A stretch of DNA of 64,000 bases from Mytilus californianus (lineage: Eukaryota): NCBI RefSeq assembly GCF_021869535.1, contig NW_026262686.1, forward strand, positions 1,860,001 through 1,924,000, in the 5' to 3' direction. A program made the position numbers and the translations under genes. The notes beneath the pieces were generated by a model. It made no database searches. It saw only the letters and a list, made by a program, of their open reading frames with translations, and was not told the DNA's origin. Shown here in pieces: positions 20,081 through 56,002 of this stretch. Position 1 is the stretch's first letter; each line of letters opens with the position of its first letter.

Positions 20081-20584
20081 AACCAAAGTGCTTGTGAGCA
20101 CTAGAAGGTAAAGATTGCTTTCATTTTACAGTGTGAATTTAAACTATAACATGGCATTGTATTAAGTCAAAACCAACTTCTATTATGGACAAAGGAAGAT
20201 AACTCCAATCTTAATATTACTTTTCATTGCTTTTTTTGTTTTTTTTATCAAGTATGGTTAAGCACATGCACATCATTTTGTAACTTAAATATTTGAGTAG
20301 ACATCATCTATAACTGTTTGCCATGAACATGGTTAGGATCCAAATAATGTTCACTTTTCTGCACTATGTTGTGTGCTCTCAAAGGTAGGAATGAGGTCTG
20401 TGTAAATATCAAGTCAGTGAAATAAGGGTTTTAATTACATTCATGCAATCTTTACCCAAAAACTGTCTACCATAACATGTCAATGTGTGCTGAAACAGGT
20501 GTTTTTAACCAATAATCAATCAATCTTTCAAATGGGTTTGAACAAATTAACATTAAGTGTTATTTAAGTCTGGCTGGTCAGTTT

Positions 20585-21140
20585 TTACACATACCAATTT
20601 ATTTTTCTCTGATTTTATGCATACCAAATTATTTCTCTCAGATTTCTTACAAATCAAATTACTTTTCTCTCTAATTTTTTACATACCAAGTTATTTTATA
20701 CATACCATGTAATTTCTCTCTAATTTTATACATACCAAGTTATTTTATACATACCAAAGTTATTTCTCTCTGATTTTTATACATACCATGTAATTTCTCT
20801 CTGATTTCATACATACCAAGTTATTTCTCTCTGATTTTATACATACTAAGTCATTTCTCTCTGATTGTATACATACCAAGTTATTTCTCTCTCATTTTAT
20901 ACATACCATGTTATTTCTCTCTCATTTTATACATACCAAGTTATTTCTCTCTGATTATATACATACCAAGTTATTTCTCTCTCATTTTATACATACCAAG
21001 TTATTTCTCTCTCATTTTATACATACCAAGTTATTTCTCTCTGATTATATACATACCAAGTTATTTCTCTCTCATTTTATACATACCAAGTTATTTCTCT
21101 CTGATTATATACATACCAAGTTATTTCTCTCTGATTATAT
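20585..21140 (-). repeat. 30-bp tandem array derived from the UPB1 stop-codon region, about 18 copies
   Basis: Minus-strand unit ataatcagagagaaataacttggtatgtat = last codons + TAA + start of the 3'UTR. Confidence 0.92.
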
Positions 21141-30200: not shown

Positions 30201-33200
30201 ATCAGATAAACTTACCATAGAAATGGCCAAAATCCTTGTGAGCTGAAAAAGAAATCTCTGTTTAATGTTTCCAACATGTCTAACAGATAATATTGTGAAA
30301 ATCATGTGGTATAGACTGCAATGTTGACAACTGTGGCACATTCTAAAGCATGCAAAGATTGTTAACTTCATCAGAAGTCTTCCATAGCTCAGAACACTAC
30401 CAAGTCTATAAGTAAATTCTTTTCAGATGTTGAGCAACTCAAGATTGTCAAGCAAGCATGTACATGTAAATAAATAATGACCCCACCACTCTTGATTGAA
30501 AAATTTATCATTTTTTAGAAAAAATTGTCCAAATTTGTTTTATATATTCAGTTAAGGTCTGCTTCAGCTTTATGGAATTTTGCCCCCCCACCCCTTTCAA
30601 AAATCCTGGATCTGCCTCATTACCCCCTTGTATCACAAAGCTTTATTTCACTTAACACCTGCAGGTTAGGTGGTTTCACTTGGAACAAGTTTTTATGTCA
30701 CTGCCATATTAGAAACTTTAAAATCACAGCTGTGACCAACTGAGATCTTCAGCTCATATCTAAAAGTAAAGCTATTTTGTCACAAGGTCCACATTACTTG
30801 CCAAGGCCATGGATAGGATCTAAAGAATGTTTAACTCAATGCATTATGCTAGGTAAGTTTGAGATGAGGCCATGAATATAACTAAATATAGATGTCAAGC
30901 CAGTGACTATAGGGTTATGAATGAATTTAGTGCCAATTACACATTATGGTAAAAAAAAAGATTTAACTCACCTTTTCTTCCATCTGCTGAGGTAAATTCA
31001 TTGGGAAATTCTTCCTGAAATAAAACATCTCATATTTATTGTAAGTTTCGGTATTATTAATTCCTTTTTTCCTTACTTAATATATTGACAAACTTCAATT
31101 GATCATAAAGTTTAACATAATAACATCTCAGTGAACTAGTATACATTAGTTTAGGGGTTATCTCAAGCCCGTCTCTGGGTGTGGGATTTTCTCGCTGTGT
31201 TGAAGACCCATTGGTTGCCTTAGGCTATTTTCTGTTCTTTGGTCGATTAGTTGCTCTTTGACACATTCCCCTTTTCCATAATCTATTCTAGTCAATGGGT
31301 CATGTGACAGTTGAACACAAAAATGGCAAGAAAATAAAGCATGTAGCTCCCACAAAGTCTATACAGAGAACCCTGCAATACCTGGCAGCATTATTTGTCT
31401 AAATGAAACAACACAGTTCCAATGTCTCCCACTGCAGCAAATATTTCATTTGTTCAAAGGGATTATGACTCCAATAATTTTCCATTTCAAGTGCAGTGAT
31501 CATTTAGATTTCAAAGACAATGGTTATATAATCCATTGATATATATATGATTTTATCTAAAACTCAACAAGAAATGAAGGCTTGAGATTGCTTACAATTT
31601 TCCATATACATGATATAAAATGTAAAAAAATTATAATAAAAAAAGAAAATGTATATTTATAAACCAAGTAATTGCATTTTAAAAATTGTTAACCATGTGT
31701 TAACATTGGTGTTTCTATTTTAAGTCTAACACAAGCATGCATGTGTTGTCATACTTTGCTTACTCCCACTCATTATTCTAAGTTTCTGAAAATAGACCAA
31801 TCCAAAAAAGGGCTTATACATTACAACTGGTCATTGTTAAGCTGCTGATCAAATACAAGTTGGTCCATTCCATAGTTACTGAGAAAATGACATGCAAATA
31901 CCGATATATGATTTCATTTAACACACTGAACAATTTAAAGTATCAGCAAACAGGAAGTAGATATCTGACAGACAAAAAGACAGCAACTCATCAATATCAA
32001 GCTGCTGACCGAATATGATTTCATTGTCTTTTAGTGCTGAATCCTGAGTAAAGTGTTACTAACGGTAATATATTTATTGAACAAAACAACAAAAAAGGTT
32101 GGATAGTAACAGACAAGGTGATAACAATATATATCCAAGTGGGGGAAGAATATCAAATGCTTAAATTGTCAAATCAGGTAAAAACTTACTGTTCCCACTC
32201 TGTTAATAGCCACTGTAAAATAATGATTTGCAATGGCAGCATTTCTAGCCTCTATTGGCCACATAGGTTCACTGAAAATATAAACAGTGGCAAGAGTTAG
32301 CAATAGTGTCATTTCTAGCTTCTATTGGCCACATAGGTTCACTGAAAATATAAACAGTGGCAAGAGTTAGCAATAGTGTCATTTCTAGCTTCTATTGGAC
32401 ACATATAGGTTCACTGAAAATATAAACAGTGGCAAGAGTTAGCAATAGTGTCATTTCTAGCTTCTATTGGACACATATAGGTTCACTGAAAATATAAACA
32501 GTGGCAAGAGTTAGCAATAGTGTCATTTCTAGCTTCTATTGGACACATATAGATAGGTTCACTGAAAATATAAACAGTGGCAAGAGTTAGCAATAGTGTC
32601 ATTTCTAGCTTCTATTGGACACATATAGGTTCATTGAAAATATAAACAGTGGCAAGAGTTAGCAATAGTGTCATTTCTAGCTTCTATTGGACACATATAG
32701 GTTCATTGAAAATATAAACAGTGGCAAGAGTTAGCAATAGTGTCATTTCTAGCTTCTATTGGACACATATAGGTTCATTGAAAATATAAACAGTGGCAAG
32801 AGTTAGCAATAGTGTCATTTCTAGCTTCTATTGGACACATATAGGTTCATTGAAAATATAAACAGTGGCAAGAGTTAGCAATAGTGTCATTTCTAGCCTC
32901 TATTGGCCACATAGGTTCACTGAAAATATAAACAGTGGCAAGAGTTAGCAATAGTGTCATTTCTAGTTTCTATTGGACACATATAGGTTCATTGAAAATA
33001 TTAACAGTGGCAATAGTTAGCAATAGTGTCATTTCTAGCTTCTATTGGCCACATAGGTTCACTGAAAATATAAACAGTGGCAAGAGTTAGCAATAGTGTC
33101 ATTTCTAGCTTCTATTGGACACATATAGGTTCACTGAAAATATAAACAGTGGCAAGAGTTAGCAATAGTGTCATTTCTAGCCTCTATGGGCCACATAGGT

Positions 33201-36200
33201 TCACTGAAAATATAAACAGTGGCGAGAGTTAGCAATAGTGTCATTTCTAGCTTCTATTGGCCACATAGGTTCATTGAAAATATAAACAGTGGCAAGAGTT
33301 AGCAATAGTGTCATTTCTAGCTTCTATTGGACACATATAGGTTCATTGAAAATATAAACAGTGGCAAAAGTTAGCAATAGTGTAATTTCTAGCTTCTATT
33401 GGCCACATAGGTTCACTGAAAATATAAACAGTGGCAAGAGTTAGCAATAGTGTCATTTCTAGCTTCTATTGGACACATATAGGTTCATTGAAAATATAAA
33501 TAGTGGCAAGAGTTAGCAATAGTGTCATTTCTAACCTCTATTGGCCACATAGGTTCACTGAAAATATAAACAGTGGAGAGAGTTAGCAATAGTGTCATTT
33601 CTAGCTTCTATTGGACACATATAGGTTCACTGAAAATATAAACAGTGGCAAAAGTTAGCAATAGTGTCATTTCTAGCTTCTATTGGACACATATAGGTTC
33701 ATTGAAAATATAAACAGTGGCAAGAGTTAGCAATAGTGTCATTTCTAGCTTCTATTGGACACATATAGGTTCATTGAAAATATAAACAGTAGCAAGAGTT
33801 AGCAATAGTGTCATTTCTAGCTTCTATTGGACACATATAGGTTCATTGAAAATATAAACAGTGGCAAGAGTTAGCAATAGTGTCATTTCTAGCTTCTATT
33901 GGCCACATAGGTTCACTGAAAATATAAACAGTGGCAAGAGTTAGCAATAGTGTCATTTCTAGCTTCTATTGGCCACATAGGTTCACTAAAAATATATACA
34001 GTGGCAAGAGTTAGCAATAGTGTCATTTCTAGCTTCTATTGGCCACATATAGGTTCATTGAAAATATAAACAGTGGCAAGAGTTAGCAATAGTGTCATTT
34101 CTAGCTTATATTGGACACATATAGGTTCATTGAAAATATAAACAGTGGCAAGAGTTAGCAATAGTGTCATTTCTAGCTTCTATTGGACACATATAGGTTC
34201 ATTGAAAATATAAACAGTGGCAAGAGTTAGCAATAGTGTCATTTCTAGCTTCTATTGGACACATATAGGTTCATTGAAAATATAAACAGTGGCAAGAGTT
34301 AGCAATAATGTCATTTCTAGCTTCTATTGGACACATATAGGTTCATTGAAAATATAAACAGTGGCAAGAGTTAGCAATAGTGTAATTTCTAGCTTCTATT
34401 GGACACATATAGGTTCATTGAAAATATAAACAGTGGCAAGAGTTAGCAATAGTGTCATTTCTAGCTTCTATTGGCCACATAGGTTCACTGAAAATATAAA
34501 CAGTGGCAAGAGTTAGCAATAGTGTCATTTCTAGCTTCTATTGGACACATATAGGTTCACTGAAAATATAAACAGTGGCAAGAGTTAGCAATAGTGTCAT
34601 TTCTAGCTTCTATTGGACACATATAGGTTCACTGAAAATATAAACAGTGGCAAGAGTTAGCAATAGTGTCATTTCTAGCTTCTATTGGCCACATAGGTTC
34701 ACTGAAAATATAAACAGTGGCAAGAGTTAGCAATAGTGTAATTCCTATCTTCTATTAGCCACTTTATCATAAAATATTCAAAATGCTCTATAACCAAAAG
34801 GTGCCAATGTTAATAGTGAATCCTAACTTTCTTGATCAGTGATGGCGGCCAAAGTAAATTATTCTAAAACTGGACCAAAATTGACATTATTACACAAACT
34901 GTGCATAATTAAGGGATCAAGACTTTGTTATTTATTATGTGAGGTGCCAAAAAGAAGTAATTTAGTATTATTACTAATATCACAACTACTTGTGAATTTA
35001 TAGTATTTTGGCCTGCTTTAAAAAAACATTAAATTATCAATGCCAATTTTAGCCCTTCATGAACCTAATCCTTTAGAGCATACTACATGTAATATAAAGA
35101 AAGATAATCCAAATGTTTTCACAAATATTTGCTAGAGTTTATTTTTTGTTACAAAAAAGTTTGGTTTGTCTGTACAAAGGATCAAAATGTCAAAGAAACC
35201 AGAATTTGGAGTAAAAGTCTAAAATTGTCTAAACCTGTGGCTGAAAGATTAAATACAATCTCTATATACAGAGTACATGAGTACAAACATTAAAGCTCAA
35301 AACGTGGCTGAAGGATTAAATACAATCTCTTTACTCTGAGTACATGAGTACAAACCTTAAAGCTCCAACCGTGGCTAAAGGATCAAATACAATCTCTTTA
35401 CATGGGGTTCATGAGTACATAACTTAAAGCTCCAACTGTGGCTGAAGGATTAAATACAATCTCTATACATGGGGTTCATGAGTACATAACTTAAAGCTCC
35501 AACTGTGGCTGAAGTATTAAATACATTCTCTATACACTGAGTACATGAGTACATAACTTAAAACTCCAACCGTGGCTGAAGGATTAAATACAATCTCTAT
35601 ACATGGGGTTCATGAGTACATAACTTAAATTCCAACCGTGGCTGAAGGATTAAATACAATCTCTATACACTGAGTGCATGAGTACATACTTTAAATCTCT
35701 TACCGTGACTGAAGGATTAAATACAATCTCTATACACTGAGTGCATGAGTACATACTTTAAAGCTCCAACCGTGGCTGAAGGATTAAATACAATCTCTAT
35801 ACATGGGGTTCATGAGTACATAACTTAAAATTCATACCGTGGCTGAAGGATTAAATACAATCTCTATACACTGAGTGCAAGAGTACATACTTTAAAGCTC
35901 TTACCGTGACTGAAGGATTAAATACAATCTCTATACATGGGGTACATGAGTACATAACTTAAAGCTCCAACCGTGGCTGAAGAATTAAATACAATCTCTT
36001 TACACTGAGTGCATGAGTACATACTTTAAAGCTCTTACTGTGACTGAAGGATTAAAAACAATCTCTATATATTGAGTACATGATATAAAAAAGAAGATGT
36101 GGTATGATTGCCAATGAGACAACTCTCCACTAGAGACCAAATGACACAGAAATTAAGTACATACCTTAAAGTTCCAACTGTGGCTGAAGGATTAAAAACA

Positions 36201-39200
36201 ATCTCTATACACTGAGTACATGAGTATATAACTTAAAGCTCCAACAGTAGCTGAAGGATTAAATACAATCTCTATACACTGAGAACATGAGTACATACCT
36301 TAAAGCTCCAACCGTGGCTGAAGGATTAAATACAATCTCTATACACTGAGTACATGAGTACATACCTTAAAGCTCCATCCATGGCTGAAGGATTAAATAC
36401 AGTCTCTATACACTGAGTACATGAGTACATACCTTTAAGCTCTAACCGTGGCTGAAGGATTAAATACAATCTCTATACACAAGAGTACATGAGTACATAC
36501 CCCAAAGCTCCAACCGTGGCTGAAGGATTAAATACAATCTGTATACACTGAGTACATGAGTACATACCTCAAAGCTCCAACGGTGGCTGAAGGATTGAAT
36601 ACAATCTCTATACACTGAGTACATGAGTACATACCTCAAAGCTCCAACCGTGGCTGAAAGGATTAAATACAATCTCTATACACTGAGTACATGAGTACAT
36701 ACCTCAAAGCTCCAACCGTGGCTGAAGGATTAAATACAATCTCTGCACCATTAATACCATACATCATCCAATTCAAGGGATGATGTCGTCCATAACAAAT
36801 GTTTATACCAATTTTACCTGTAAACAATCAAAATCATACATAATTTTTCATGTTAAAAATACAAATCATATATAATTTTACCTGTAAACAATTACAAATT
36901 GTACATAATTCAACCTGTAAACAATTACAAATTGTAGATAATTTTACTTGTCATTTCTTATAAACAATTACAAATTGTGTATTATTTTACCTGTTGCTAA
37001 TGAAAGTAAATCCAGTGAAGGGTTTTGGATACATAACATTTATAAAGTGATAGTGTTTGAGACCTGCATTGCAATGTGGTATGGGACAAAAACGCTACAT
37101 TAGGCTTAAATTAAAATATTGTTTGTTTGCAGTTTACCGACCGACCCTCGAAAATCCGCCCGACTGTGAAAATTTTATTGCTTTTAATTTGAAGAAATTA
37201 TTTTTTATTTTTCTATTGACACAATCCGGAACTTCTGGTCGTTTCTGGAATTGATTTAAAGTCTGGGTCGATTACACGTTTCAAGTTCGGTTTTTCTTAC
37301 CTTCTTGTCATGCGTATATGGGACCGTTTAATAATAAAGCACATGGAGATTGTTTACAGGTATCGATGAAGACATGGAGGAGTACTTTGCGCTGTCGTTT
37401 TCTGTCAATTTTAAAACAAATAACAACCAAAAAAGTTTAATAGTAAACTGTTTTTACAGATTCAGACAGATATCATTGATGATTTGAGAACGCATGATGC
37501 AGCGGATATTCATAAAACCGACACGATAACCATTTCAATCTCAAACAGATCAGGTACAGAATCTCTTGAGCCTGACTTTATGGAACCAATATCAGTGGTT
37601 AAAAAAATTTGACAGCAGCCTGAAGTATGCCATAGTTTCTATAAAACGTTGTGAAGACAACAAGGATGAAACCACTTCTCCATGACTTCATGGATACCTG
37701 TAAACACGCCAGGAAGGGCGCATTTGAAATTTATAATCGATAGACAATGCCAAATCTATAAGAAGCCACAGAAACTACACAAAGATGTAAAGAAAATGAT
37801 TAGTTGGCTTGTAAAAATAAATATACTTTCTCTATGTTAAATCTATCTTCTATTGCAATGAGTATGCTCCTTTAGGATAAGGGGAGCTACCCTACTCATT
37901 GCAATTCTTCTCCCTCTTACAATATTAAATATACCCAAACAGTGTGGCTTGTGTGAATTGAATTAAAACATGTCCTTAGGAGCTATGCTGCCAATTTTTT
38001 ATGCAGTCAAAACATTTCAGTACAGACCATTTACTTTTAAAGGAGTGCTATTGATTTCACCCTGAAGTCTAAGATTTTTTTGGTTTTAATTAAAGCCTGA
38101 TCACATCAAAATATCTTTCAAAATATAACCTTATTACATATAATTAAATATTGTTAGATTTATGAAAACAGTCCGATGTCAAATATATTTTTTCAAGTTT
38201 CCTTTTTTTTTTAATTGAGAAAGATTCAATGGTTAATTTTTTTTATTGATAACACTCTTACATTGTCTTATGAATCTTTGATATCTACATTTTCCTAATG
38301 AAAATACTCTACTCATGAAAACTTTCTAGTAAAGAAGCATATGTCAGTGAACAATTTCTTTAAAACAATTCTAGTCATTCCTTGTTTATAAGATCTTATA
38401 AGTGTTCCAGTACTAGTATTTAATAATGTCATAAATTGGATAATCACACCATGTTTATATAGTTTCAATTTTGGTTGAAAAGTTTTTATCTGAAAATGCC
38501 TTATCGTGTACTTGGCTGGGGGACTATGGTAAGAACCAAGTAACGAGTCTACAAATAAACTGTACTTCACACTTTACTTCTTTTAATTTTTAATACAAGG
38601 CCATGCTACTGCACTGGCAGACGACAACTAACTTAATAATTAATAGCTAAAAACATGTTTCACCTTTTCCGACATAAGAGATAAATTGTGTGAGGCAGTC
38701 CCGATAACCAGAAGACCCAAAATAGGAATATAACAGCCTGTTCATTTCATGTTGGTTTTCAGTGTTTGTTGTTTTAAAAAAAAATTCTTCACAATAAACT
38801 TGGTTTGTGTAACTGCTTGTTTAAACTTCATTTTGGCTGATAAAATAAAATATTTTTCCTACCTACCGACCCTTCAGTCTGAAGGTACAGTCGGAAAACT
38901 GCAAACAAACATATTTTTAAGGTTGGCCTTATAAAAGATGACATTTTGAATTTCAGATCTGAACATTGTTAAAACACAAAATTGATCTAAAACAGTAGAG
39001 AGAGCTGAAAGAAGTAAGAAGCCTGAAGTGAACTTTTTAGGGTTAGCAATTTAGATATTCATCACTTCTAAGGGGCCACAATTGTTTTATTATACCAATC
39101 TGACAGTGGGAAGGCCATTAAACCATCAAAAAAGATTTGTATACTATAGTAAATGATTGTAGGAACACTTGCATTGGAAAATTATTTTGTGTCCAAGAAT

Positions 39201-42200
39201 TTCTCCTATGTCATGTATGTATAACAAAGTTAGACTTGTTCTGTAAAATATTGATGGCCCTGAAAAGGACTTCTTATGAGAGATATCCTCTGCACTAGAT
39301 GAATTCCAAGCCTTGTTCATTGTTGTTTGATCTTGTTTTCTCGTCACTTTATTGACTTTTAACCTGGCCTTTGCCCTTTTGTTTACATACACTGTGACAT
39401 CATTTTGATGGGAGATAACTTTTGTACAAATAAAGAAGCTCAAAAGGTAATGTGAATAATAGTCTTATTCAATGCATGGTGTAAATTTTTAGAGTTATTC
39501 ATCCTTCCTTGCATTTTAATGAAAATTAACTGAATTATTCCCTCTCACTTGATAATGTGTTATTGTTTAACATATATGTAAGGTATAATAATGATAATAA
39601 CTGCAGTATTTAGAGTCAAACACTATTCTTGCAGTATCAAGAGTACGTTTAACTTACCGAACTGTGTATCAAATACTTTATGTCCAGTATTGCCCTCCAT
39701 ATAATAGGTTGACTGAAAAATAAATAATCAATACAAGTATTTATATACATAATAAATAAATGAATAAAATAAATGTCAGCTTTAGCCCTCACCTAGTAAT
39801 TTTATTTATCTTATTAGGGGATCTAAATCATAAATGAAGGTCAAGGTCATCCATTTGGTATTGACCTCCTTCGTTTCTAAAAATGATGCATCAAGTGCTA
39901 GCAAACTCCAAACAATTGGGTAAGGGTATAATTGATTAGTAGATAAATACTTAATTTATCTCAAAATATAAATTGAATTATTGTTAATTCAGTTAGTCAA
40001 GTTAAAGTACATTTCCTGTTTTATAATGATACTTGCTTGTGCTAACTTATAATGTTTAACAATTTCTTGTGTTATAATGTTTAATAATTTCTTGTGCTAA
40101 CTTATTATGTTCAATAATTTCTTGTGCTAACTTATAATGTTTAACAATTTCTTGTGCTAACTTATGTTTAATAATTTCTTGTGCTAACTTATAATGTTTA
40201 TTATTAGTCGTCCCACTATCTATATCACTCTGCTCAGCTCTTAATAAAACAACATATCACAGCTTTGTGATGTCATATACATTGACCTGGCATTAACAAC
40301 TTTGACCTGGACATATCAACAACGTCATAATGTATAAACCGACGTTAATAAGTTTGACCCGAACTTATCAAGACATCTCCCGGGTTGCTGGTGAAACAAA
40401 GAAAACACTTATTTCTTTCATGCAAAATACGCAAATACAACCTAATTAATCGATTATCTGGTCATCTGCATATTGGTATTGTAAAATATAAGCTGCTCGA
40501 CACAATATGAAGCCTTTTTGAACTCGTTCGCTGCCCTCACTCGACAAAAAGCTTCATATTGTGACTCGCAGCTGATATTTTCAGTATCAATATGCAGACA
40601 ACCTGATAATCGGTACATAATTTCATGTGCTAACTTATAATATTTAATAATTTCATGGGCTAACTTATAATGTTTAATAATTTCTTTGGCTAACTTATAA
40701 TGTTTAAGCACAACAAAGTCTTGTGCTAACTTATCATGTTCAATCACAATAAAATCTTGTGCTAACTTATCATGTTTAATCACAATAAAATCTTGTGCTA
40801 ACTTATCATGTTTAATCACAATAAAATCTTGTGCTAACTTATCATGTTTAATCACAATAAAATCTTGTGCTAACTTATCATGTTTAATCACAATAAAATC
40901 TTGTGGTAATGTTTAATCATAATAAATTCTATTGCTGACTTATTTAATATGTTTAATCATAATAAATTCTATTGGTAACTTATTATGTTTAATCATGATA
41001 AACCCTTGTACTAACTGATTATGTTTACTTCTTATTAAAGTTTAATTGGATTGTTTTCTGACCTCATTAAAGTCTCCTACTCTTGGTATATGATTTTTCC
41101 TAGACTTCCCTAAGTACTGCCCTGTGTTAGAGATCACCACTGAAATGGAAAAACAAGTACTTTATGTATACATATTGTAAAATGCTCACCATCTAAGAGG
41201 ATAGAATTCTCAAGAGAGGGGAGATAATTACCTTTTTGTTCTACCTCCATGATTAGCATTTCAGAATAAATAACTTCAAAGACAGGGGAGATAATTACCT
41301 GTTAGTTCTATGATTACCATCTCAGAGGAAACTAGACATCATTGAGATGGGAGCTATGTCTGTGGGCCCCGCTGACCTTGAACTTTGACCTAGGAAGTTG
41401 TACAAACATTATGACACATCCTCTGGTGTTGGTTAATATACATGTCAAGTATAAAGTATAAAATCATAACGGTTCTCTAGATATAGAGCGGACACAATTT
41501 GTTACGGACTGACGGACGGACAGACTGATCACTATAGGGCGACCCGCCTAGGTGGGGCCATAATAACTTTCAAGACAGGAGAGATAATTACCTTTTCATT
41601 CTACAACCATGATCACCATCTAAGAGGAAATAACTTTCAAGACATTGCTGACAAGGGAGATAATTACTTGTTTGTTCTACCACCATGATCACCATCTTAG
41701 AGGAAACAACTTTCAAGACAGGGGAGATAATTACATGTTAGTTTTACCACCATGATCACAATCTCAGAGGAAATATCTTTCAAGACAAGGGAGATAATTA
41801 TCTGTTAGTTTTACCACCATGATCACTATCTAAGAGGATAGAACTTTCAAGACAGGGGAGATAATCATATGTTAGTTTTACCACCATGATCACAATCTCA
41901 GAGGAAATAACTTTCAAGACAAGGGAGATAATTGTCTGTTAGTTTTATCACCATGATCACTATCTAAGAGGATAGAACTCTCAAGACAGGGGAGACAATT
42001 ACCTGTTCGTTCTACTACCATATGATAAGCATCTCAGAGGAAATAACTTTCAAGACAGGGGAGATAATTACCTGTTAGTTCTACAACCATGATCAGCATC
42101 TAAGAGGATAGAACTCTCAAAACAGGGGAGATAATTACCTGTTCGTTCTACCGCCATGTTTAGCATCTCAGAGGAAATAACTTTCCAGACAGGGGAGATA

Positions 42201-45200
42201 ATTATCTGGTTATTTCTACAACCAAGATCAGCATCTTAGAGGATAGAACTCTCAAAACAGGGGAGATAATTACCTGGTTGTTCTACCACCATGATAAGCA
42301 TCTCAGAGGAAATAACTTATTTGATTTGAACTATCATTGAGTTTGTCAACCAGCCTCTGAATTAAACAACACTTTTTTTTTCTAAGGACTAAGGTGGTAT
42401 AAAAATTTTCTTGAAAGTGATAATTAGTGCACCTGATCCAGATTTTTATCATTCTGACATACTGGCAGAGGAGTACAACTCAAAAGTTCCTAACTAGCTT
42501 TGCACTTGTTTTCAATCTCTCTATTAATCAGGAGATGAAAACGTGATCACAGGAAAAATTTTGATTGGCTAATGATCACTGATTATGATTGTTTCCTTTG
42601 AGAAAAGTTTAAAATGGGGAACAAAACAAAAAATTTGAGTGAAGATTTTCACAAATCAGGTTTTAGGGCTATTTTCACAATCAGGATTTTGTAATCAGGA
42701 CAAGAGGTTTATATATATATCGTGTAGTGCATGCCATAGTCCTATAAGTTGGCAGGTATGAAGATGAAAAGGAAGAAGAGAAAGACAACAATTTTCTATA
42801 AAAAAAATGTGACAAGCCAAAGATGTGTATTACCTGCTGTGTTAGCTAAAATGTCTCCATGATCAGCATCACACTCCAGTATAGGGGACACTATAACCAT
42901 GTTGTATTTACCTGCTGTGTTAGCTAGAATATCTCCATGATCAGCATCAGGCTCCAGTATAGGGGACACTATAACCATGTTGTATTTACCTGCTGTGTTA
43001 GCTAAAATGTCTCCATGATCAGCATCACGCTCCAGTATAGGGGAAACTATAACCATGTTGTATTACCTGCTGTGTTAGCTAGAATATCTCCATGATCAGC
43101 ATCACGCTCCAGTATAGGGGACTCTATAACCATGTTGTATTACCTGCTGTGTTAGCTAGAATATCTCCATGATCAGCATCACGCTCCAGTATAGGGGACA
43201 CTATAACCATGTTGTATTACCTGCTGTGTTAGCTAGAATATCTCCATGATCATCATCACGCTCCAGTATAGGGGACACTATAACCATGATAACCATGTTG
43301 TATTTACCTGCTGTGTTAGCTAGAATATCTCCATGATCAGCATCACGCTCCAGTATAGGGGACATTATAACCATGTTGTATTTACCTGCTGGGTTAGCTA
43401 GAATATCTCCATGATCAGCATCACGCTCCAGTATAGGGGACACTATAACCATGTTCTATTTACCTGCTGTGTTAGCTAGAATGTCTCCATGATCAGCATC
43501 ACGCTCCAGTATAGGGGACACTATAACCATGTTGTATTTACCTGCTGTGTTAGCTAGAATATCTCCATGATCAGCATCACGCTCCAGTATAGGGGACACT
43601 ATAACCATGTTGTATTACCTGCTGTGTTAGCTAGAATATCTCCATGATCAGCATCAGGCTCCAGTATAGGGGACACTATAACCATGTTGTATTTACCTGC
43701 TGTGTTAGCTAGAATATCTCCATGATCAGCATCACGCTCCAGTATAGGGGACACTATAACCATGTTGTATTTACCTGCTGTGTTATCTAGAATATCTCCA
43801 TGATCAGCATCACGCTTCAGTATAGGGGACATTATAACCATGTTGTATTACCTGCTGTGTTAGCTAGAATATCTCCATGATCAGCATCACGCTCCAGTAT
43901 AGGGGACACTATAACCATGTTGTATTTACCTGCTGTGTTAGCTAGAATATCTCCATGATCAGCATCACGCTCCAGTATAGGGGACACTATAACCATGTTG
44001 TATTTACCTGCTGTGTTAGCTAGAATATCTCCATGATCAGCATCACGCTCCAGTATAGGGGACACTATAACCATGTTGTATTTACCTGCTGTGTTATCTA
44101 GAATATCTCCATGATCAGCATCACGCTTCAGTATAGGGGACATTATAACCATGTTGTATTACCTGCTGTGTTAGCTAGAATATCTCCATGATCAGCATCA
44201 CGCTCCAGTATAGGGGACACTATAACCATGTTGTATTTACCTGCTGTATTAGCTAGAATATCTCCATGATCAGCATCACGCTCCAGTATAGGGGACACTA
44301 TAACCATATTGTATTTCTTTGCCAGCTGAAAAAAGTTTTAATAATATATATTGACTATTTACATGTATGGTTTTGAAAACAAAAGGAAGATTCTTAACTA
44401 AAATCTCATCAAAGGGCAAGAAACTTCCTCAAGTTGAAAGACAATAGAAGTCTGTTTATCGATCTGGTTTTTTTAAGGCAACTTCAATGATGTTGGTTAA
44501 CATTTGTTCTCACATAACTTGACTAAGAAAAAACTTTCTCAGTTCGGTTGCTTGAGTTATTATCATGCAAAAAAATCAAAGCAAAATTTAAGAAATAAAC
44601 ATTAATAAATTTATACCTAGAAATTATTTATAAAAGATCAAACTAGAGAATAAAAAACATACAATATTACATAGGATGGCCTGTCATGGTTGACAATTTA
44701 AGAAGTATTAGACATGTTGGTTGTTGCTTTACTTCCCTAGACACTTATTTACATTTTGTAGGTCATCAGATCTTAAAATGAACTCAGGCATAAAATTCCT
44801 CATCAGTAACAAAGATGAAAGCTTAATCAAAGCCACTCAGCTGTAAAATAAGTGATAAGTACCGTCCATCTAATGGCACAAGGTCAGAATATCTTCCAAA
44901 GATGCATTTGCACACTAAATTAAATAGCTGTTGGTCTTCAACCTGGTTTTGGAGGCAGCCACAATAGCAGAAGTAAATACTCCGAAAATCCCCGTAATTT
45001 TGGTTGAGACAAAGAATAAACTGTTGACACAGAGATGTGTCTCGCCTGTTGTCAAAAATTTGAAAAAATGTGAATCTGATGGACAGCAACATTGCTTATT
45101 AATTCAAAGTCGCTGGACCATGACCTAGAGTCAGGGCCTCAAAATTGTTGTCAAATTGATATAAACTGATAGTAATGCAACTTTACAGAAAGTATCATTA

Positions 45201-48200
45201 CCTATCACAAGTAGTTCCTATCAAACTGACTTAAGCAGAAAACTTAACAATTGTTGATGCCACTGCCGCTGGCAAAGCAACACCTATGCCTCGCATTTCG
45301 TGAATTTCGTCGCTGACGATACAAAAACTCTAATGATTACTGAAAATTTAGGATTTATCTGCTATTCAGATTTTTTAGTTTATATCATGTTTATGAAGAA
45401 AGTAGATAATTTATACCTCCTGTCACATTTTATGTGGAAGGGGGAGATAATTCACACATCTTGTAACATTTTATTTGGAAGGGGGGAGATAATTCACACC
45501 TCTTGTAACATTTTATGTGGAAGGGGAGACAATTCATACCTATTGTGACATCTTTTTTGGGAAAGGAATGTTGAAGGGGGAGATAATTCATACCTATGGT
45601 GATATCTTTTTGGGGAAGGGAGATAATTCACACCTCTTGTAACATTTTTGTGTGGAAGAGGAAGATAATTCATACCTATGGTGATATCTTTTTGGGGAAG
45701 GGAGATAATTCATACCTCTTGTAACAATTTTGTTGTAGCTCCATCTTCTGCTGATTCAGCAAATTCACACCATGGGTGTTTCTCACGTGTACAGAAGGCA
45801 AATGGCATTGCTGTAAAATAAATGTGTGATTTTAATTTCCCAACAGCTTACTTTTGGTAAAAACTTGTCATAAATCAAAAAATTTCTGACACTTATCTTT
45901 TGGCAATAAAATATTCAAGTAGTTATATATATTCAAGCCATGGTAAGAAAACATTCAAAAATATATATGCCAATAATACTTTTTCACTTCAACTCTTATT
46001 GAGCAATTTCGCAAGGTTCTTGTACAATGTATTATCATTTTTGTATTTTGATATAAGTTGGATTATATTTTGCATTTTGTAATTAATAGTAATACATAAA
46101 AGTTGATTACCCTGCTCATGTAAAGAAAAACTCCATAGAAAAGTTTAACACTGTCTCTTGCCAAATTCAACATACATTTAAAAACATGGTGAATATTGGT
46201 AGCACCTAAGACAAAGTATTGTCCTCTGTTTCACTACAAAAGCACAAAACAAGTTTTTTTCTATTTCTAGACATGCTGAATAGTTAATTTTGCTCAACAT
46301 TTTATTGTTCAAATTAGCATTCCCAGGATAGGGTATGACATCATAATACTAACAAAACTGAAAATAACGGGACATTTCTTAACCTTTTACTTGACACAGT
46401 TATCTACCCTGATTTTTTCAACTTACTCCATGCTTCTTGTAAACAAATGACATTGACACCACATAAACTGGCCATCTCTATAATCTCTGATATTCTGTTG
46501 TGTAGAGATTCAACCTGAAACAGAAACCAGGACAATAGAAACACAACTTATAAACTTGCCATTTCTCTTCATATGTATCTAATATATACTGTTATGTTAA
46601 GATTCATATACTGTTATGTTAAGATTCAATCTCTTACAGAAATCAGATAGCATCAAAAACATAAAAAGGTAATAGGCAAACTTACACCACATACATAGTG
46701 CTCAGTGTTAACACCACATACATAGCGCTCAGTGTTAACACCACATACATAGTGCTCAGTGCTAACACCACATACATAGTGCTCAGTGCTAACACCACAT
46801 ATATAGTGTTCAGTGCTAACACCACATATATAGTGTTCAGTGCTAACACCACATATATAGTGCTCAGTGTTAACACCACATATATAGTGCTCAGTGCTAA
46901 CACCACATATACAGTGCTCAGTGTTAACACCACATACATAGTGCTCAGTGTTAACACCACATACATAGTGCTCAGTGCTAACACCACATATACAGTGCTC
47001 AGTGTTAACACCACATACATAGTGCTCAGTGCTAACACCACATATATAGTGCTCAGTCCTAACACCACATATATAGTGCTCAGTGCTAACACCACATATA
47101 TAGTGCTCAGTGCTAACACCACATATATAGTGCTCAGTGTTAACACCACATATATAGTGCTCAGTGCTAACACCACATATATAGTGCTCAGTGTTAATAC
47201 CACATATATAGTGCTCAGTGTTAACACCACATATATAGTGCTCAGTGCTAACACCACATATATAGTGCTCAGTACTAACACCACATATATAGTGTTCAGT
47301 GTTAACACCACATATATAATGCTCAGTCCTAACACCACATATATAGTGCTCAGTGTTAATACCACATATATAGTGCTCTGTGCTAACACCACATATATAG
47401 TGCTCTGTGCTAACACCACATATATAGTGCTCAGTGCTAACACCACATATATAGTGCTCAGTGATAACACCACATATATAGTGCTCAGTGTTAACACCAC
47501 ATATATAGTGCTCCGTGCTAACACCACATATATAGTGCTCCGTGCTAACACCACATAGATAGTGCTCCGTGCTTACACCACATATATAGTGCTCAGTGCT
47601 AACACCACATATATAGTGCTCAGTGCTAACACCATTCACACTTTATTTTCTGCTGTTTGCAAAAGCTCGCAATTTGATACCCTTGCTCCCTATACACACT
47701 TGAAAAGAATAATCTAATATGCAACTGCAAAGTCCATGTTTGGTACATAGAAATAATGAGTAAAAAGTAAAATAGGAATTGCCAATAAATGCCATATGTC
47801 ATGTCGAAATATTACCTGTTTTGATACAGACTTTGTGGTAGGCAGTTCATGGTTTAAATCTTACGTGTTTTGATACAGGCTCTGTAGTAGGCATTTTATG
47901 GATCTAACCTTCAGTCAGGGGTGCTACTTGTACAAGTAATTTTTATTTACTTGAAGAAGTAAGTATTAATATACTTATATAAGTAAATTTGTAGGATACT
48001 TATACAAGTGTATTTTATTTAATTTACTTGTATAGGTAAAAAAAAATGGGCTTAGTTATGTCCCTTAGACATTCAGATTTTTTTACTTATACAAGTAAAA
48101 AAGTCAGCCTATCTTCTTTTCTTGAATTCTTAGGACTTCTTTGCTCTAATAGAATTTTTGATTGTCTGTCCTTTGCAGATGTCTTTACTAATCATTTAAG

Positions 48201-52548: not shown

Positions 52549-55500
52549 CTTTTCTTCGTATAAGCTTCCTCTGTTAGGAACACCCCTCGTTTAAGGGTAA
52601 TATGGATAAAAAGTCTTTAACTATGTACACACTCCGTGAATATATATACACTTGCTAAAATTTAAAATAGACTAAGTTTCTAAGTTGAGTGATAATTGTC
52701 AACAGCCATTACACACTTATCAGTTTTAGTCTCGAGTTATGCATCTTGTAGCACATATCTCTTGTGAGCATTTCTAGTTCTTCTATTTTGAGCTTGCTTT
52801 CACTAAATATATATGTGAAGTTTGTACAGTCAATTATAAGGACTGTAATTTTATGTCTATCAATGAATGTCTCTTTCCACTTCATTTCTCCAATGAATTT
52901 GGTTATATAAGTTTTTATTGGGTTGAAAGTTTCTTTTCTTGTCTCACTTAATGCTGAGCAGGTAGTAAGCATATGAATAAGGTCTTCTGGTTCTTGGTTG
53001 CACATTTGACAAGTTGGAGTAATTTCATATCTGCTGAATTTATGCCGATCAGCTTGTAATGTATACGTTCGTGTCATCATCCTACTTTTGATTATACCTT
53101 TTCGAACATCAAGGATTGTAGGTTGCAATGTGGTGTAGGAGATATGCGGCTTTCCATTCTTAATTTGGTTTATAGATAGATATTTAAGTGATGTCTTTTG
53201 GACTGTGTCAATTTGAAGAGCCTTATTCCAGTAATTTGACATATTAAAATTCACTAATGTTTTCCACTTATTTTTAGTAGGCAGACTGCTTTGGAGTTCC
53301 CATATATTTGGAAGCTTGTACAATTGTAGGGTTTCCATTGCACAAAAGAAGAAGCTTTTTGGATTGTCAAAATTGATTGATGATTGGCGTTGTACAAGAT
53401 CTTGAATAGTTTGGTTTTTAGCCGATAATAAAGAGTAGAGCATAGATAGTTGCCGCTTGTGAAGCTCTCCTTCAACTGGTATTGCTCCTAAGAGTAGATA
53501 TATTGCTGATGTAGCTGTTCTTTGTGGCAGAGATTGAATATGTCTCAAGGTATTTTTATGAAATTTTTCTAGTATTTCAATTTGTCCTTTTGTAAGTGGT
53601 AGTATTTCTAAACCATATAAAAGTCTTGGGAGAATATATGTCTTATAGATGTTATATCCTGTAATTGGGTCAACCCCATTTGTTCCATGAAGACCGGAGC
53701 TCATTAAGGAGTATTTTGTTCTTCTTGCTAATTTAATGCGGTCATCAATGTTAATTTCATTTTCTCTTTTGTTTGTTCTTTGAAGACCTAAATGTGTTGT
53801 GGCATCTGTTGGTTCTATAGTTTTTCCTTTTAATACCCAACTGTTATCTGTTTCTTGCGTATTACACTGTACGACTTTAGTTTTTATTGGATGGATGTTA
53901 TATTGATGCTGATCAGCATATCTACCTATAATGTCAAGCATTAATTGCATTTCTGATGTGTCCGAGCTCAATAAGGCAATGTCATCTGCACAAGTAGGTG
54001 CACCTATGTAAATATTTCCTAGATGGAAGCCAATAGAGTTGTTTTTGGGTTCTTCAAGTAGATCTTGGACATACAATTTATAGAGGTGTGTAGATAAAAT
54101 GCCTCCTTGTCTTACTCCTTGTTTTATATTAAAACTATCACTGATATCCCCCATCCACTTTACTTTTGATTCTAAATCTGTATATAGGCCCTTAATAAGT
54201 TGTAATAGATCTGGAGGAATATTTTGGTCTAGTAGTTTGTCCATTAGTATAATATGTTTGACTACATCAAACGCTGATTGTACGTCAACTGTTGTTATGA
54301 ATAATGGTATGTTGTTTTTAAGTTTTTCACATTTTGCTTCTGTTATAAGTAAGCTTGCCATAAGGGGACATAATCCTTCTGTGAAGCCAAATTGTAAATC
54401 TGGACCCGGGTGTAATTGGAGTTTCTTAAGAATACACAGTTCATGTACTTTTCCAATGATGGGAGTAACAGTAATTCCTCTGTAACTCTTGACATCTAGA
54501 GGGTTTTTGCCACTCTTTATAACAGGAGTAAGGATTCCTGTTTTAAAGGCTCTTGGAATAGAGTTGGTCTCTTTGATTTTGTTGAATAGAGTTGTTAATA
54601 CTGGTGTTAATACTGATTTGGCATTCTTAAGATGTTCGGCAGTGAGCCCGTATTCATCTGGTGATTTCCCTACATTTAGAGTTTCTATTGATTTTTGAAT
54701 TTCTGTTTCTGTGTATGGGTCAGATGTTACTGGATTTTCTTTATAAAATTTTTCAATTAGATTTTGACGTGTTTGACAGAGATCTAAATAGGAGTTGTCA
54801 TATTCCAAGTTTTTTGGCATACTTAAGTCTTCATAATAATTAGCAAATACTTTTCTTTGGTTTGAATGACAGTATTCCTTTTCACCATCTATTTCTATAC
54901 AAGTTGTAGTACTAGATCTGGAATTTCGGTTTCTATTTATCAGTCTATAGAAAAGTTTTGTTGTTGGTTTTTCCATGATTTGTTGGTAGAGTTGTTTTCT
55001 AGCAATAGCTTGCTCTATTCTTTGTGAGTTTCTCAAGAGTTTCTTTGCTGTTTTTAATTCAGTATGTGATGGATGGTTTTGTGGCCGTCCCTGATTTTTC
55101 CATTGTGAATATAGTAATTTACATGATTTCAGATGTTTTCGTACGGTTGGCGTTGCTTTCCATTTTGGCCCTTGTAATTTGATAGGTTTTGCTGGAACAG
55201 CTACCTTTGTTGCTTTCAGTAATTCATTTGTAATGGTTTGAAGTTGGTCTGAAGTTGAATCCTCAGATTTAATTTTAAGGAGCCCCTCTGATAAATTTGA
55301 GTTGTATATTTCAGTGTTTATTTCATCCCAGAGAAGTTTTTTGTATGATGTTCCTTCAGATGGTTTTCTATTTGCAACACTTGGAATTGTTACAGTGGTG
55401 TTTGTTTCTACTGGCACATGAGCTGAGCTATTTGTCGCTGAACGGTCCCAAATTTTGTGTTCTTTGAAGATTGATATATTTCTTGTTAAAATGTAATCAA

Positions 55501-55999
55501 TTTGAGAGGATGATTGTCCAGAGTGATGAAAGAAAGTCATTTTTGAGTCATAATTTCCAGCTGTTTGAAGGCCTAGTTCCTGTACAAAGTTTTTCAGTAA
55601 TTTATCATGCTTGTTTGATCTTGAATGTAATAAAGTTCCATTGAGATCCCCACAGAAAATTATTTCATAAAGGTCCTGATATTTTTGTATTATATCAAAG
55701 ATTATATCTAGACATTCTGAGTACTCATATGCCGAGTCTTTGTCATTAGTTGGAAGATACGCATTGATTATGCAGATATCATAGTTAGAGGATAGGGTGA
55801 TAGCTACAATTCTTTCGTTTCCCTCTTTTAATTTCTTAACGTTCCCACTCCATGAATCTGGCCATAAAATTGAGACCCCTGATTGTCCTTTTGGTAGTTT
55901 TGATCCGTCTAGTGGATCGTTTGAGTCGTGACAGCGTGTGACGTTGTCAAAATTTGGTAGTATATCAGAGAGAAATTGTTTTTGAAATTCCCACAACCA
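52549..55999 (-). mobile_element. 5'-truncated LINE (RTEX/RTE-like, clade provisional) with 8-bp TSD catgactt
   Basis: catgactt at 52541-52548 and 56000-56007; about 160-nt 3'UTR ending in a GAA-rich tail (cgaagaaaag on the minus strand). Confidence 0.8.
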
Positions 56000-56002
56000 C
56001 AT
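52709..56002 (-). CDS. Non-LTR retrotransposon (LINE) ORF2: N-terminally truncated APE endonuclease + reverse transcriptase + C-terminal CCHC motif
   Basis: APE motifs INAYLP, FCGDLNG, SQIDYIL, SSAHVPV; RT motifs KSPDEYG, YRGITV, QFGF, DVQSAFD, GVRQGGILS, CADDIALL; CQMC..H..C near the C-terminus; 1097 codons uninterrupted. Confidence 0.96.
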   Translation of the reverse strand: MWLWEFQKQFLSDILPNFDNVTRCHDSNDPLDGSKLPKGQSGVSILWPDSWSGNVKKLKEGNERIVAITLSSNYDICIINAYLPTNDKDSAYEYSECLDIIFDIIQKYQDLYEIIFCGDLNGTLLHSRSNKHDKLLKNFVQELGLQTAGNYDSKMTFFHHSGQSSSQIDYILTRNISIFKEHKIWDRSATNSSAHVPVETNTTVTIPSVANRKPSEGTSYKKLLWDEINTEIYNSNLSEGLLKIKSEDSTSDQLQTITNELLKATKVAVPAKPIKLQGPKWKATPTVRKHLKSCKLLYSQWKNQGRPQNHPSHTELKTAKKLLRNSQRIEQAIARKQLYQQIMEKPTTKLFYRLINRNRNSRSSTTTCIEIDGEKEYCHSNQRKVFANYYEDLSMPKNLEYDNSYLDLCQTRQNLIEKFYKENPVTSDPYTETEIQKSIETLNVGKSPDEYGLTAEHLKNAKSVLTPVLTTLFNKIKETNSIPRAFKTGILTPVIKSGKNPLDVKSYRGITVTPIIGKVHELCILKKLQLHPGPDLQFGFTEGLCPLMASLLITEAKCEKLKNNIPLFITTVDVQSAFDVVKHIILMDKLLDQNIPPDLLQLIKGLYTDLESKVKWMGDISDSFNIKQGVRQGGILSTHLYKLYVQDLLEEPKNNSIGFHLGNIYIGAPTCADDIALLSSDTSEMQLMLDIIGRYADQHQYNIHPIKTKVVQCNTQETDNSWVLKGKTIEPTDATTHLGLQRTNKRENEINIDDRIKLARRTKYSLMSSGLHGTNGVDPITGYNIYKTYILPRLLYGLEILPLTKGQIEILEKFHKNTLRHIQSLPQRTATSAIYLLLGAIPVEGELHKRQLSMLYSLLSAKNQTIQDLVQRQSSINFDNPKSFFFCAMETLQLYKLPNIWELQSSLPTKNKWKTLVNFNMSNYWNKALQIDTVQKTSLKYLSINQIKNGKPHISYTTLQPTILDVRKGIIKSRMMTRTYTLQADRHKFSRYEITPTCQMCNQEPEDLIHMLTTCSALSETRKETFNPIKTYITKFIGEMKWKETFIDRHKITVLIIDCTNFTYIFSESKLKIEELEMLTRDMCYKMHNSRLKLISV

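What the first reader, a model, noticed from the sequence alone, without database searches (positions are those of the whole stretch)
32190..34760. About 35 tandem copies of the exon 9 acceptor; about half have lost the AG and every decoy leads to a stop
Seen: each unit is tatattttcag| plus the 5' part of exon 9. The genuine exon is the last, donor-proximal copy. About 17 units carry a CAG-to-CAA change (plus-strand ttcattg) that destroys the acceptor, about 17 keep CAG and one has TAG. Entering at a 70-bp unit reads [23 protein letters not shown] and then TGA; entering at a 72-bp unit hits TAG after six codons. Established: 3' splice-site scanning tends to favour the first AG after a branch point, so skipping 2.4 kb of near-identical acceptors implies strong exon definition. 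Inference: the AG-killing variant may have spread because it lowers mis-splicing.
Basis: partly seen in the sequence, partly recalled or inferred. Interest (0 to 1): 0.8.

Follow-up and report, generated by a model that had tools for sequence, protein, structure and literature searches.

The report
Silent splice-acceptor repeat in mussel UPB1
The last 38 bases of an intron plus the first 32 bases of exon 9 of a mussel beta-ureidopropionase gene are copied 34 extra times in tandem, yet the sampled RNA uses only the last, genuine copy; this is a large example of a known, apparently harmless repeat type ("mirage"), and the AG loss in half the copies looks like ordinary repeat turnover, not selection.

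Summary
On the minus strand, 34 decoy units of 70-76 bp precede the true intron 8/exon 9 junction of a beta-ureidopropionase (UPB1-like) gene. Each unit carries a branch-point motif, pyrimidine tract, acceptor and the first 32 nt of exon 9. Sixteen decoys keep CAG, one has TAG, 17 have CAA, and all 34 would give an early stop.

Stranded RNA-seq shows exon 9 at about 23x and 29 exon 9-10 junction reads, but zero depth over the four nearest AG-intact decoys. A transcript contig from another study joins exon 8 to the last copy.

This is an acceptor-type "mirage" minisatellite, a kind known from amphioxus (and, on the donor side, human F7). This scan has already reported many such arrays in this genome, which earlier notes name as California mussel.

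- CAA has one origin, nested in the 72-bp subfamily.
- Non-splice variants are more frequent.
- CAA is absent from both array ends (P=0.0013).
- All 35 branch-point motifs are intact.
- No decoy use is seen.

A weak hint remains: two of the gene's three large junction arrays carry frequent splice-killing variants (P about 0.05). Intron 8 is 89% copies of its own two junctions.

The parts
32190..32271 (-). Exon 9 of the UPB1-like gene (82 nt; encodes [28 protein letters not shown]; donor ACA|gtaagt at 32190/32189)
   Evidence: Matches beta-ureidopropionase 8pt4/6ftq/2vhh residues about 257-294 and Pfam CN_hydrolase. RNA depth about 23x and 29 junction reads to exon 10.
32272..32309 (-). Genuine 3' splice site module: branch-point motif TGCTAAC (32302-32296, branch A about 32297), pyrimidine tract, CAG (G at 32272)
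   Evidence: Sequence. The X12 transcript contig joins the exon 8 tail here.
32310..34739 (-). 34 decoy units (70/72/76 bp), each a complete copy of the 3' splice-site module plus the first 32 nt of exon 9; 16 CAG, 1 TAG, 17 CAA
34740..34770 (-). Degenerate partial unit at the upstream edge of the array
   Evidence: Read from the sequence; TRF ends the array at 34756.
34024..34455 (-). Largest CAA block (units 5-10). Other CAA runs: units 13-15 (33668-33883) and 27-30 (32600-32887)
32310..32599 (-). Four exon-proximal decoys (units 31-34), all AG-intact, with zero RNA depth
   Evidence: In one search, bins 32280-32543 have X5 depth 0 while DNA-like contigs of X3 are laid there.
34757..35231 (-). 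Only non-repeated part of intron 8 (475 nt of 4431)
35232..36702 (-). Exon 8 donor array: about 20 decoy copies (67 bp) of the exon 8 tail plus donor; 7 have G+1>T and 4-5 have G-1>A; the proximal copies are intact
36703..36817 (-). Exon 8 (115 nt; contains the catalytic-Cys motif region [14 protein letters not shown]; donor TTGAG|gtatgt)
36818..36951 (-). Small 33-bp array of exon 8 acceptor copies (tttacag|GTAAAAT)
30972..31014 (-). Exon 10 (43 nt), used as the control junction
   Evidence: joint 31013-32189 with 29 reads.

Best explanation
This is an acceptor-type 'mirage' minisatellite. A roughly 70-bp segment spanning the intron 8/exon 9 boundary of a mussel beta-ureidopropionase gene was duplicated in tandem. 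Replication slippage or unequal exchange then expanded it to 34 extra copies (mechanism inferred).

Because the segment ends inside the exon, every extra copy lies upstream of the true junction and is intronic. Only the last copy is continuous with the remaining 50 nt of exon 9 and its donor.

The spliceosome uses only that last copy (shown for the sampled RNA). The likely reason is that 3' splice-site commitment depends on cross-exon contacts with the unique exon remainder and the downstream 5' splice site; this exon-proximal rule mirrors the one shown experimentally for the human F7 donor repeat (inferred here). Any slip to a decoy would add a premature stop and be subject to NMD (inferred).

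The CAA variant is a neutral subfamily marker. It arose once on the 72-bp subfamily and was multiplied in the array interior by the same turnover that multiplied the AT-insertion and G>T variants. The array edges kept the ancestral CAG state.
For: Array anatomy and counts.

Gene identity: CN_hydrolase and beta-ureidopropionase structures 8pt4, 6ftq and 2vhh.

RNA: in stranded run X5, exon 10 is at 26x and exon 9 at 13-23x, with 29 exon 9-10 junction reads. Depth is 0 over 32280-32873. Depth 0 is informative at least for 32280-32543, where X3 DNA-like contigs are laid. The X12 1350-nt transcript contig goes from exon 10 through exon 9 directly into the exon 8 tail at the last acceptor. Retention of any upstream decoy would have kept units 31-34 in the RNA, so decoy use is below roughly 5-10% of steady-state mRNA.

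Haplotypes: G/-/G 10, G/+/T 7, A/+/T 15, and two single recombinant types; 8 CAA units are 100% identical.

Derived frequencies: CAA 0.50, below AT insertion about 0.7, G>T 0.65 and column 28 at 0.91.

CAA is absent from the 4+4 end units (P=0.0013) and is weakly clustered (13 runs against 18 expected, P=0.058). The branch-point motif is intact in 35/35 copies. RNA shows no special structure (z=-0.08) and there is no Rfam match.

Literature: mirages, including an acceptor-side one (BflGb6), do not disturb splicing, and array edges escape homogenisation (PMC3087553; PMC3902484). Identical F7 pseudo-donors are functional but silent because the exon-proximal site wins (PMC1557585).
Against: RNA comes from one raw-read run (about 6% of it read) and one transcript contig. 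NMD could hide mis-spliced products, and other tissues or stresses were not sampled.

Exon definition alone does not obviously explain why unit 34 is not used, since it would give a normal-sized 152-nt exon.

Two of the three large junction arrays of this gene carry a high-frequency change that kills the essential dinucleotide: AG>AA here, and G+1>T in 7 of 20 exon 8 donors. Under a column-permutation null this is only about P=0.05, so some selection is possible.

The mutational mechanism of array birth is not shown.
Confidence: 0.75

Rival explanations
1. One reading: AG-dead (CAA) units spread because arrays with fewer working decoy acceptors mis-splice less. This would be weak purifying selection acting on array composition in a species with a very large population.
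For: Half of the decoys lack AG. The neighbouring exon 8 donor array has 7/20 G+1>T plus 4-5 G-1>A and two +3 changes. Essential-dinucleotide hits among major variants in 2 of 3 large arrays give P about 0.05 under a column-permutation null.
Against: CAA has a single mutational origin, nested in the 72-bp subfamily, which also expanded with AG intact (7 units). Non-splice variants are more frequent. There are no independent knock-outs: the branch point is intact in 35/35 copies and pyrimidine-tract changes are singletons. Both array ends, including the four exon-proximal decoys, keep AG (P=0.0013). The intact decoys 31-34 show no use in RNA, so there is little to select on. All 18 exon 5 decoy donors and all 7 exon 4 decoy donors keep GT.
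Confidence: 0.15
2. The array has a function. It could be a sink for U2AF/U2 snRNP, a delay element, or a regulated source of unproductive (stop-containing) transcripts that tunes UPB1 output.
For: 18 complete 3' splice-site modules with perfect branch-point motifs are retained. Intron 8 is 89% junction copies.
Against: There are no decoy-containing reads. Variant structure is typical of neutral minisatellites. Hundreds of similar arrays in unrelated genes of this genome are noted by the scan, which argues against a gene-specific role. No conserved structure was found.
Confidence: 0.06
3. The array is an assembly artefact, either a collapsed or an inflated repeat.
For: Tandem arrays are hard to assemble. 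Copy number in run X3 looks lower than in the window: a unit-length contig has depth 220 against about 28 for single-copy sequence.
Against: Units differ by ordered, subfamily-structured variants. An independent run (X3, which differs from the window at many flanking sites) holds contigs running from exon 9 into the array. It also holds a 71-nt unit contig at about 8x single-copy depth that ends exactly at the two G/A sites, as expected if both CAG and CAA units exist.
Confidence: 0.03

Closest known systems
'Mirage' minisatellites of amphioxus (Adh3, Canestro et al. 2002, cited in PMC3087553; globin BflGb6/BflGb9; TnC; PGBD5 in PMC3902484)
   Same: Tandem repeats whose unit spans an exon-intron boundary of the host gene and carries splice signals. 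BflGb6 is likewise an acceptor-side array (intron 3' end plus exon 5' part). Normal splicing is kept. Some copies have lost AG/GT. The interior is homogenised and the edges are excluded.
   Different: The scale differs: 34 decoys here against 3-6 in BflGb6. It is combined with a donor array in the same intron, so 89% of the intron is junction copies, and with at least 6 junction arrays in one gene. The host is a mollusc; no mollusc report was found in the held library.
Human F7 IVS7 37-bp VNTR (PMC1557585)
   Same: Identical pseudo splice sites in a junction-spanning minisatellite are functional in principle but silent. Only the exon-adjacent copy is used, and position rather than sequence decides.
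   Different: F7 is donor-side with 5-9 copies. Here it is acceptor-side with 34 decoys, and the site used is the last rather than the first in transcription order, so a simple 5'-to-3' first-site scan cannot be the rule.
NAGNAG / tandem alternative acceptors
   Same: Repeated acceptor AGs compete for one donor.
   Different: Those lie 3 nt apart, share one branch point and are both used. Here the units are 70-72 nt apart, each has its own branch point, and only one is used.
Recursive splice sites (ratchet points) and poison exons
   Same: Intronic acceptors that could be used before the final junction; stop-containing products subject to NMD.
   Different: No 5' splice site is regenerated after the decoy AG (AG|TGAACC), the units contain no good donor, and no use is seen in RNA.

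Membership tests
Mirage (exon-intron junction) minisatellite | Head-to-tail tandem array of minisatellite-size units (10-160 bp in published cases) | tested here: met
   72-bp period, 35.2 copies, 95% matches.
Mirage (exon-intron junction) minisatellite | The unit spans an exon-intron boundary of the host gene and includes its splice signal | tested here: met
   38 nt of intron 3' end (branch point, pyrimidine tract, AG) plus 32 nt of exon 9. Unit 26 is identical to the genuine junction over 70 nt. Exon identity rests on the PDB and Pfam matches.
Mirage (exon-intron junction) minisatellite | The authentic junction is the terminal copy, contiguous with the rest of the exon | tested here: met
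   Copy 35 continues into the unique 50 nt of exon 9 and its donor.
Mirage (exon-intron junction) minisatellite | Regular splicing is not disturbed | tested here: met
   Zero RNA depth on decoys 31-34 against about 23x on exon 9; a transcript contig joins exon 8 to the last copy. Limited to the runs sampled.
Mirage (exon-intron junction) minisatellite | Length instability or polymorphism between alleles | tested here: inconclusive
   Unit-contig depth in run X3 suggests fewer copies than in the window, but contig depth is a poor measure of copy number.
F7-type pseudo-donor VNTR | The repeated element carries the 5' splice site (donor side) | tested here: not met
   This array carries the 3' splice site. 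The donor-side analogue is the neighbouring exon 8 array at 35232-36702.
Recursive splice site | The acceptor AG is directly followed by a regenerated donor (AG|GTRAGT) | tested here: not met
   AG|TGAACC in all units. The only GT created at an exon 8/decoy joint would remove one exon base and shift the frame.
NAGNAG tandem acceptor | Two AGs 3 nt apart, both used | tested here: not met
   Spacing is 70-76 nt and a single acceptor is used.
Beta-ureidopropionase (CN hydrolase superfamily), host gene | Sequence match across the catalytic-Cys region and the following exon | tested here: met
   Exon 8 ORF against 8pt4/6ftq E about 1e-19 and exon 9 ORF E about 4e-11; Pfam PF00795. The full-length protein was not assembled.

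The most novel reading that the evidence does not exclude
In this mussel, splice junctions are preferred birthplaces of minisatellites: 6-7 of about 13 arrays in this one gene, against roughly 5% expected. Once born, the arrays would evolve under weak selection against working decoys, so that AG- or GT-killing subfamilies (CAA here, G+1>T in the exon 8 donor array) take over the array interior. That would make these arrays a natural, genome-wide read-out of the fitness cost of decoy splice sites.
Probability: 0.15. Interest if true: 0.65.

Novelty: new member of a known kind. Interest (0 to 1): 0.3.

Why it matters
As a single object it is an ordinary, if very large, example of a repeat type already described, and this scan has already reported the type many times in this genome.

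It does have value as a natural experiment. Eighteen complete 3' splice sites, identical from -38 to +32, sit in one intron, and the same intron holds about 20 donor copies, yet only one pair is seen in the sampled RNA. Splice-site choice here therefore cannot rest on the local consensus. It must rest on continuity with the rest of the exon.

If the weak hint of enriched AG/GT loss held genome-wide, the many arrays in this mussel would give a direct measure of selection against decoy splice sites.

Tried and rejected
Following the tool's own advice I laid the part with fewer copies (30960-32930). Junctions to decoys 1-25 were therefore tested only indirectly, through the absence of retained units 31-34.
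2. The loose-end table was truncated, so exon 8-9 junction reads of X5 are not individually listed.
3. Recursive-splicing ratchet: rejected, because no donor is regenerated.
4. RNA structure masking the decoys: rejected (z=-0.08). Rfam gave no match.
5. The idea that the intron-like half of the unit derives from the exon continuation (TATTTT-CAGTG against TATTTTACAGTG): only marginal (P about 0.05), and dropped.
6. The 36-bp array (40689-41027) and the 27-bp array (46684-47634) are not recognisably junction-derived (P=0.52 and 0.30).
7. Exact look-up of three array ORFs in the protein collection found nothing. A metagenome pattern scan for the unit found nothing.
8. Orthologous loci in other mussels were not obtained.
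9. The original mirage paper (PMC117041) is not held, so it is cited through PMC3087553.
10. The species name comes from earlier scan notes only; run organisms were coded.
Full report
**What is there**

The window carries, on the minus strand, a gene whose exon translations match beta-ureidopropionase. The exon 8 ORF hits the human and Drosophila structures 8pt4, 6ftq and 2vhh at E about 1e-19. The exon 9 ORF hits them at about 4e-11. Pfam gives CN_hydrolase. Coding exons can be followed from about 51886 down to 21124. Earlier notes of this scan name the genome as California mussel; I could not verify the species because run organisms are coded.

Key coordinates:
- Exon 8 is 36817..36703, with donor TTGAG|gtatgt.
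- Exon 9 is 32271..32190, 82 nt, with donor ACA|gtaagt.
- Exon 10 is 31014..30972.

**The array**

TRF reports a 72-bp period, 35.2 copies and 95% matches at 32240-34756. Cut on the minus strand, it is 34 decoy units followed by the genuine junction, with a degenerate partial unit at the upstream edge.

A unit consists of two parts:
- 38 nt of intron 3' end: a TGCTAAC branch-point motif 25 nt before the AG, then a pyrimidine tract and CAG.
- The first 32 nt of exon 9.

Acceptor state in the decoys is CAG in 16, TAG in 1 and CAA in 17. Unit lengths are 70 bp (11), 72 bp (22) and 76 bp (1).

The stops themselves are not remarkable: 70-bp units shift the frame onto the TGA at the start of the next unit, and AT-rich sequence is dense in stops.

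**Is the last copy the one used?**

The geometry forces it, because only the last copy continues into the unique 50 nt of exon 9 and its donor.

The RNA agrees. In stranded RNA-seq run X5 (raw reads, same species label):
- All exon reads have the orientation expected for a minus-strand gene.
- Exon 10 is at 26x and exon 9 at 13-23x.
- 29 reads cross the exon 9-10 junction.
- Depth is zero from 32280 to 32873.

The interior bins (identical units 27-30) are also empty in the DNA-like run X3, so they may be technically unlayable. Bins 32280-32543 (units 31-34) do hold X3 contigs, so the RNA zero there is meaningful.

Any transcript spliced to any decoy, and not spliced again, would retain units 31-34. 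Decoy use is therefore below roughly 5-10% of steady-state mRNA in that sample.

A 1350-nt transcript contig from another study (X12) runs from exon 10 through exon 9 and then directly into the tail of exon 8 at the last acceptor.

Two caveats apply. NMD could remove mis-spliced RNA, and only one raw-read run was sampled.

**Why only that copy?**

Unit 26 is identical to the genuine junction over all 70 nt. The discriminating information must therefore lie more than 32 nt downstream of the AG, that is, in the rest of exon 9 and its donor. This fits exon definition and mirrors the experimentally studied human F7 intron 7 minisatellite. There, identical pseudo-donors are functional but silent because the exon-adjacent site wins (PMC1557585).

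This is an inference, and it is not complete: unit 34 would give an ordinary 152-nt exon, yet it is not seen. RNA structure does not explain it (z=-0.08). The units hold no good donor and regenerate none after the AG, so neither decoy exons nor a recursive ratchet are possible.

**The CAA variant**

Three linked sites within 20 nt define the subfamilies: the AG G/A, an AT insertion at +9 and a G/T at +14. Haplotype counts are:

| Haplotype (AG site / AT insertion / G-T site) | Units |
|---|---|
| G/-/G (ancestral, like the genuine copy) | 10 |
| G/+/T | 7 |
| A/+/T | 15 |
| Recombinant types (units 10 and 21) | 1 each |

CAA is thus a sub-lineage of the 72-bp subfamily, and that subfamily also expanded with its AG intact. 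Eight CAA units are identical over all 72 nt.

Derived frequencies:

| Variant | Derived frequency |
|---|---|
| CAA | 0.50 |
| AT insertion | 0.68-0.71 |
| G>T | 0.65 |
| G>A at column 28 | 0.91 |

Further points against selection:
- There are no independent knock-outs. All 35 branch-point motifs are intact, and pyrimidine-tract changes are singletons.
- CAA units are weakly clustered: 13 runs against 18 expected, P=0.058.
- CAA is absent from the four units at each end, P=0.0013. This is the classical picture of interior homogenisation with edges excluded, also described for amphioxus mirages (PMC3087553).
- The end units are the decoys that should matter most, whether under a first-come-first-served model or an exon-proximity model, and they all keep AG.

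**A residual hint**

I looked at the other junction arrays of the same gene.

| Array | Decoys that kept the essential dinucleotide | Source |
|---|---|---|
| Exon 8 donor (35232-36702) | 13 of 20 keep GT; 7 have G+1>T, 4-5 have G-1>A, tied to higher-order subfamilies in the distal half; the six proximal decoys are intact | |
| Exon 5 donor | 18 of 18 keep GT | |
| Exon 4 donor | 7 of 7 keep GT | |
| Exon 2 donor | about 6 of 7 keep GT | |
| Exon 8 acceptor | 3 of 5 keep AG | |

I treated the major variants of each large array as balls thrown on unit columns. The chance of hitting the essential dinucleotide is then about 0.11, 0.25 and 0.075 for the three large arrays. The chance of two or more hits is about 0.05. 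This is my own estimate, and it depends on the frequency threshold I chose. It is too weak to claim selection but enough to justify a genome-wide test. I give selection about 0.15.

**Context**

Intron 8 is 4431 nt. Of this, 1471 nt are exon 8 donor copies, 2485 nt are exon 9 acceptor copies and only 475 nt are unique, so 89% of the intron is copies of its own two ends.

Within the gene, 6 arrays are clearly junction-derived:
- exon 2 donor
- exon 4 donor
- exon 5 donor
- exon 8 acceptor
- exon 8 donor
- exon 9 acceptor

One more is probable: the 67-bp array at 41565-42318 against the exon 5 end, P=0.004. A further array copies the stop-codon region. About 5-6 arrays are not junction-derived.

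If a seed overlaps a junction by chance about 5% of the time (my rough estimate), six of thirteen is on the order of 1e-5. Earlier follow-ups of this scan reached the same conclusion for other genes, and the scan lists very many such arrays in this genome. Why junctions are favoured is unknown.

**Comparison with what is known**

The object meets every testable defining feature of a 'mirage' minisatellite. The term was coined for amphioxus Adh3 by Canestro et al. 2002, cited in PMC3087553, and is also used in PMC3902484. The amphioxus globin BflGb6 case is likewise acceptor-side. The donor-side human analogue is F7 IVS7.

I found no paper describing such arrays in molluscs in the held library. 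That is not proof that none exists.

**Verdict**

This is a real, very large, silent acceptor-type mirage and a new member of a known kind, already found repeatedly by this scan on other DNA of the same genome. The selection reading of the CAA variant is not supported.

Noticed in passing
window 35232-36702 with 32272-34756: Intron 8 (4431 nt) is 89% made of tandem copies of its own two ends, with about 20 exon 8 donor copies at its 5' side and 34 exon 9 acceptor copies at its 3' side. Only 475 nt (34757-35231) are unique.
   Followed up: yes
window 36818-36951: Small 33-bp array of exon 8 acceptor copies. The junction motif tttacag|GTAAAAT is at once an acceptor and a donor-like sequence, so it looks like a recursive splice site. 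Use was not tested.
   Followed up: partly
window 41565-42318: A 67-bp array between the exon 5 donor array and exon 6 shares GATG.TGATCATGG and CTAAC..AGGTAAT with the exon 5 end (P=0.004). It is probably an older, diverged exon 5 donor array.
   Followed up: partly
window 20583-21140: A 30-bp array of 18 copies repeats the last codons (..IIREK), the stop codon and the first 3'UTR bases of the gene (35-nt match with one mismatch).
   Followed up: partly
window 31158-31289 (intron 9): Fragment of an extremely abundant interspersed repeat. Contig word depth is 10^4-10^5 times the single-copy level in DNA-like runs, with RNA reads on both strands. It has no Rfam match.
   Followed up: partly
window 30216-30242: A 27-nt coding mini-exon (AHKDFGHFY, acceptor tttttcag, donor G|gtaagt) lies between exon 10 and the [14 protein letters not shown] exon. 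It was revealed by the loose ends of RNA reads at 30972.
   Followed up: yes
window 52712-56011 (minus strand): Intact 1100-aa ORF of a non-LTR retrotransposon (Exo_endo_phos_2, RVT_1, zf-RVT) just upstream of the UPB1-like gene.
   Followed up: partly
window 32196: All 33 RNA reads, the X12 transcript contig and the X3 contig show A instead of C on the plus strand. This is a synonymous GTG>GTT change in exon 9, so these runs come from individuals or haplotypes other than the assembled one.
   Followed up: no
window 32215-32226 (inside exon 9): Exon 9 contains an internal acceptor-like motif, ttattttacag|TG, about 57 nt after the true acceptor. No reads suggest it is used.
   Followed up: no
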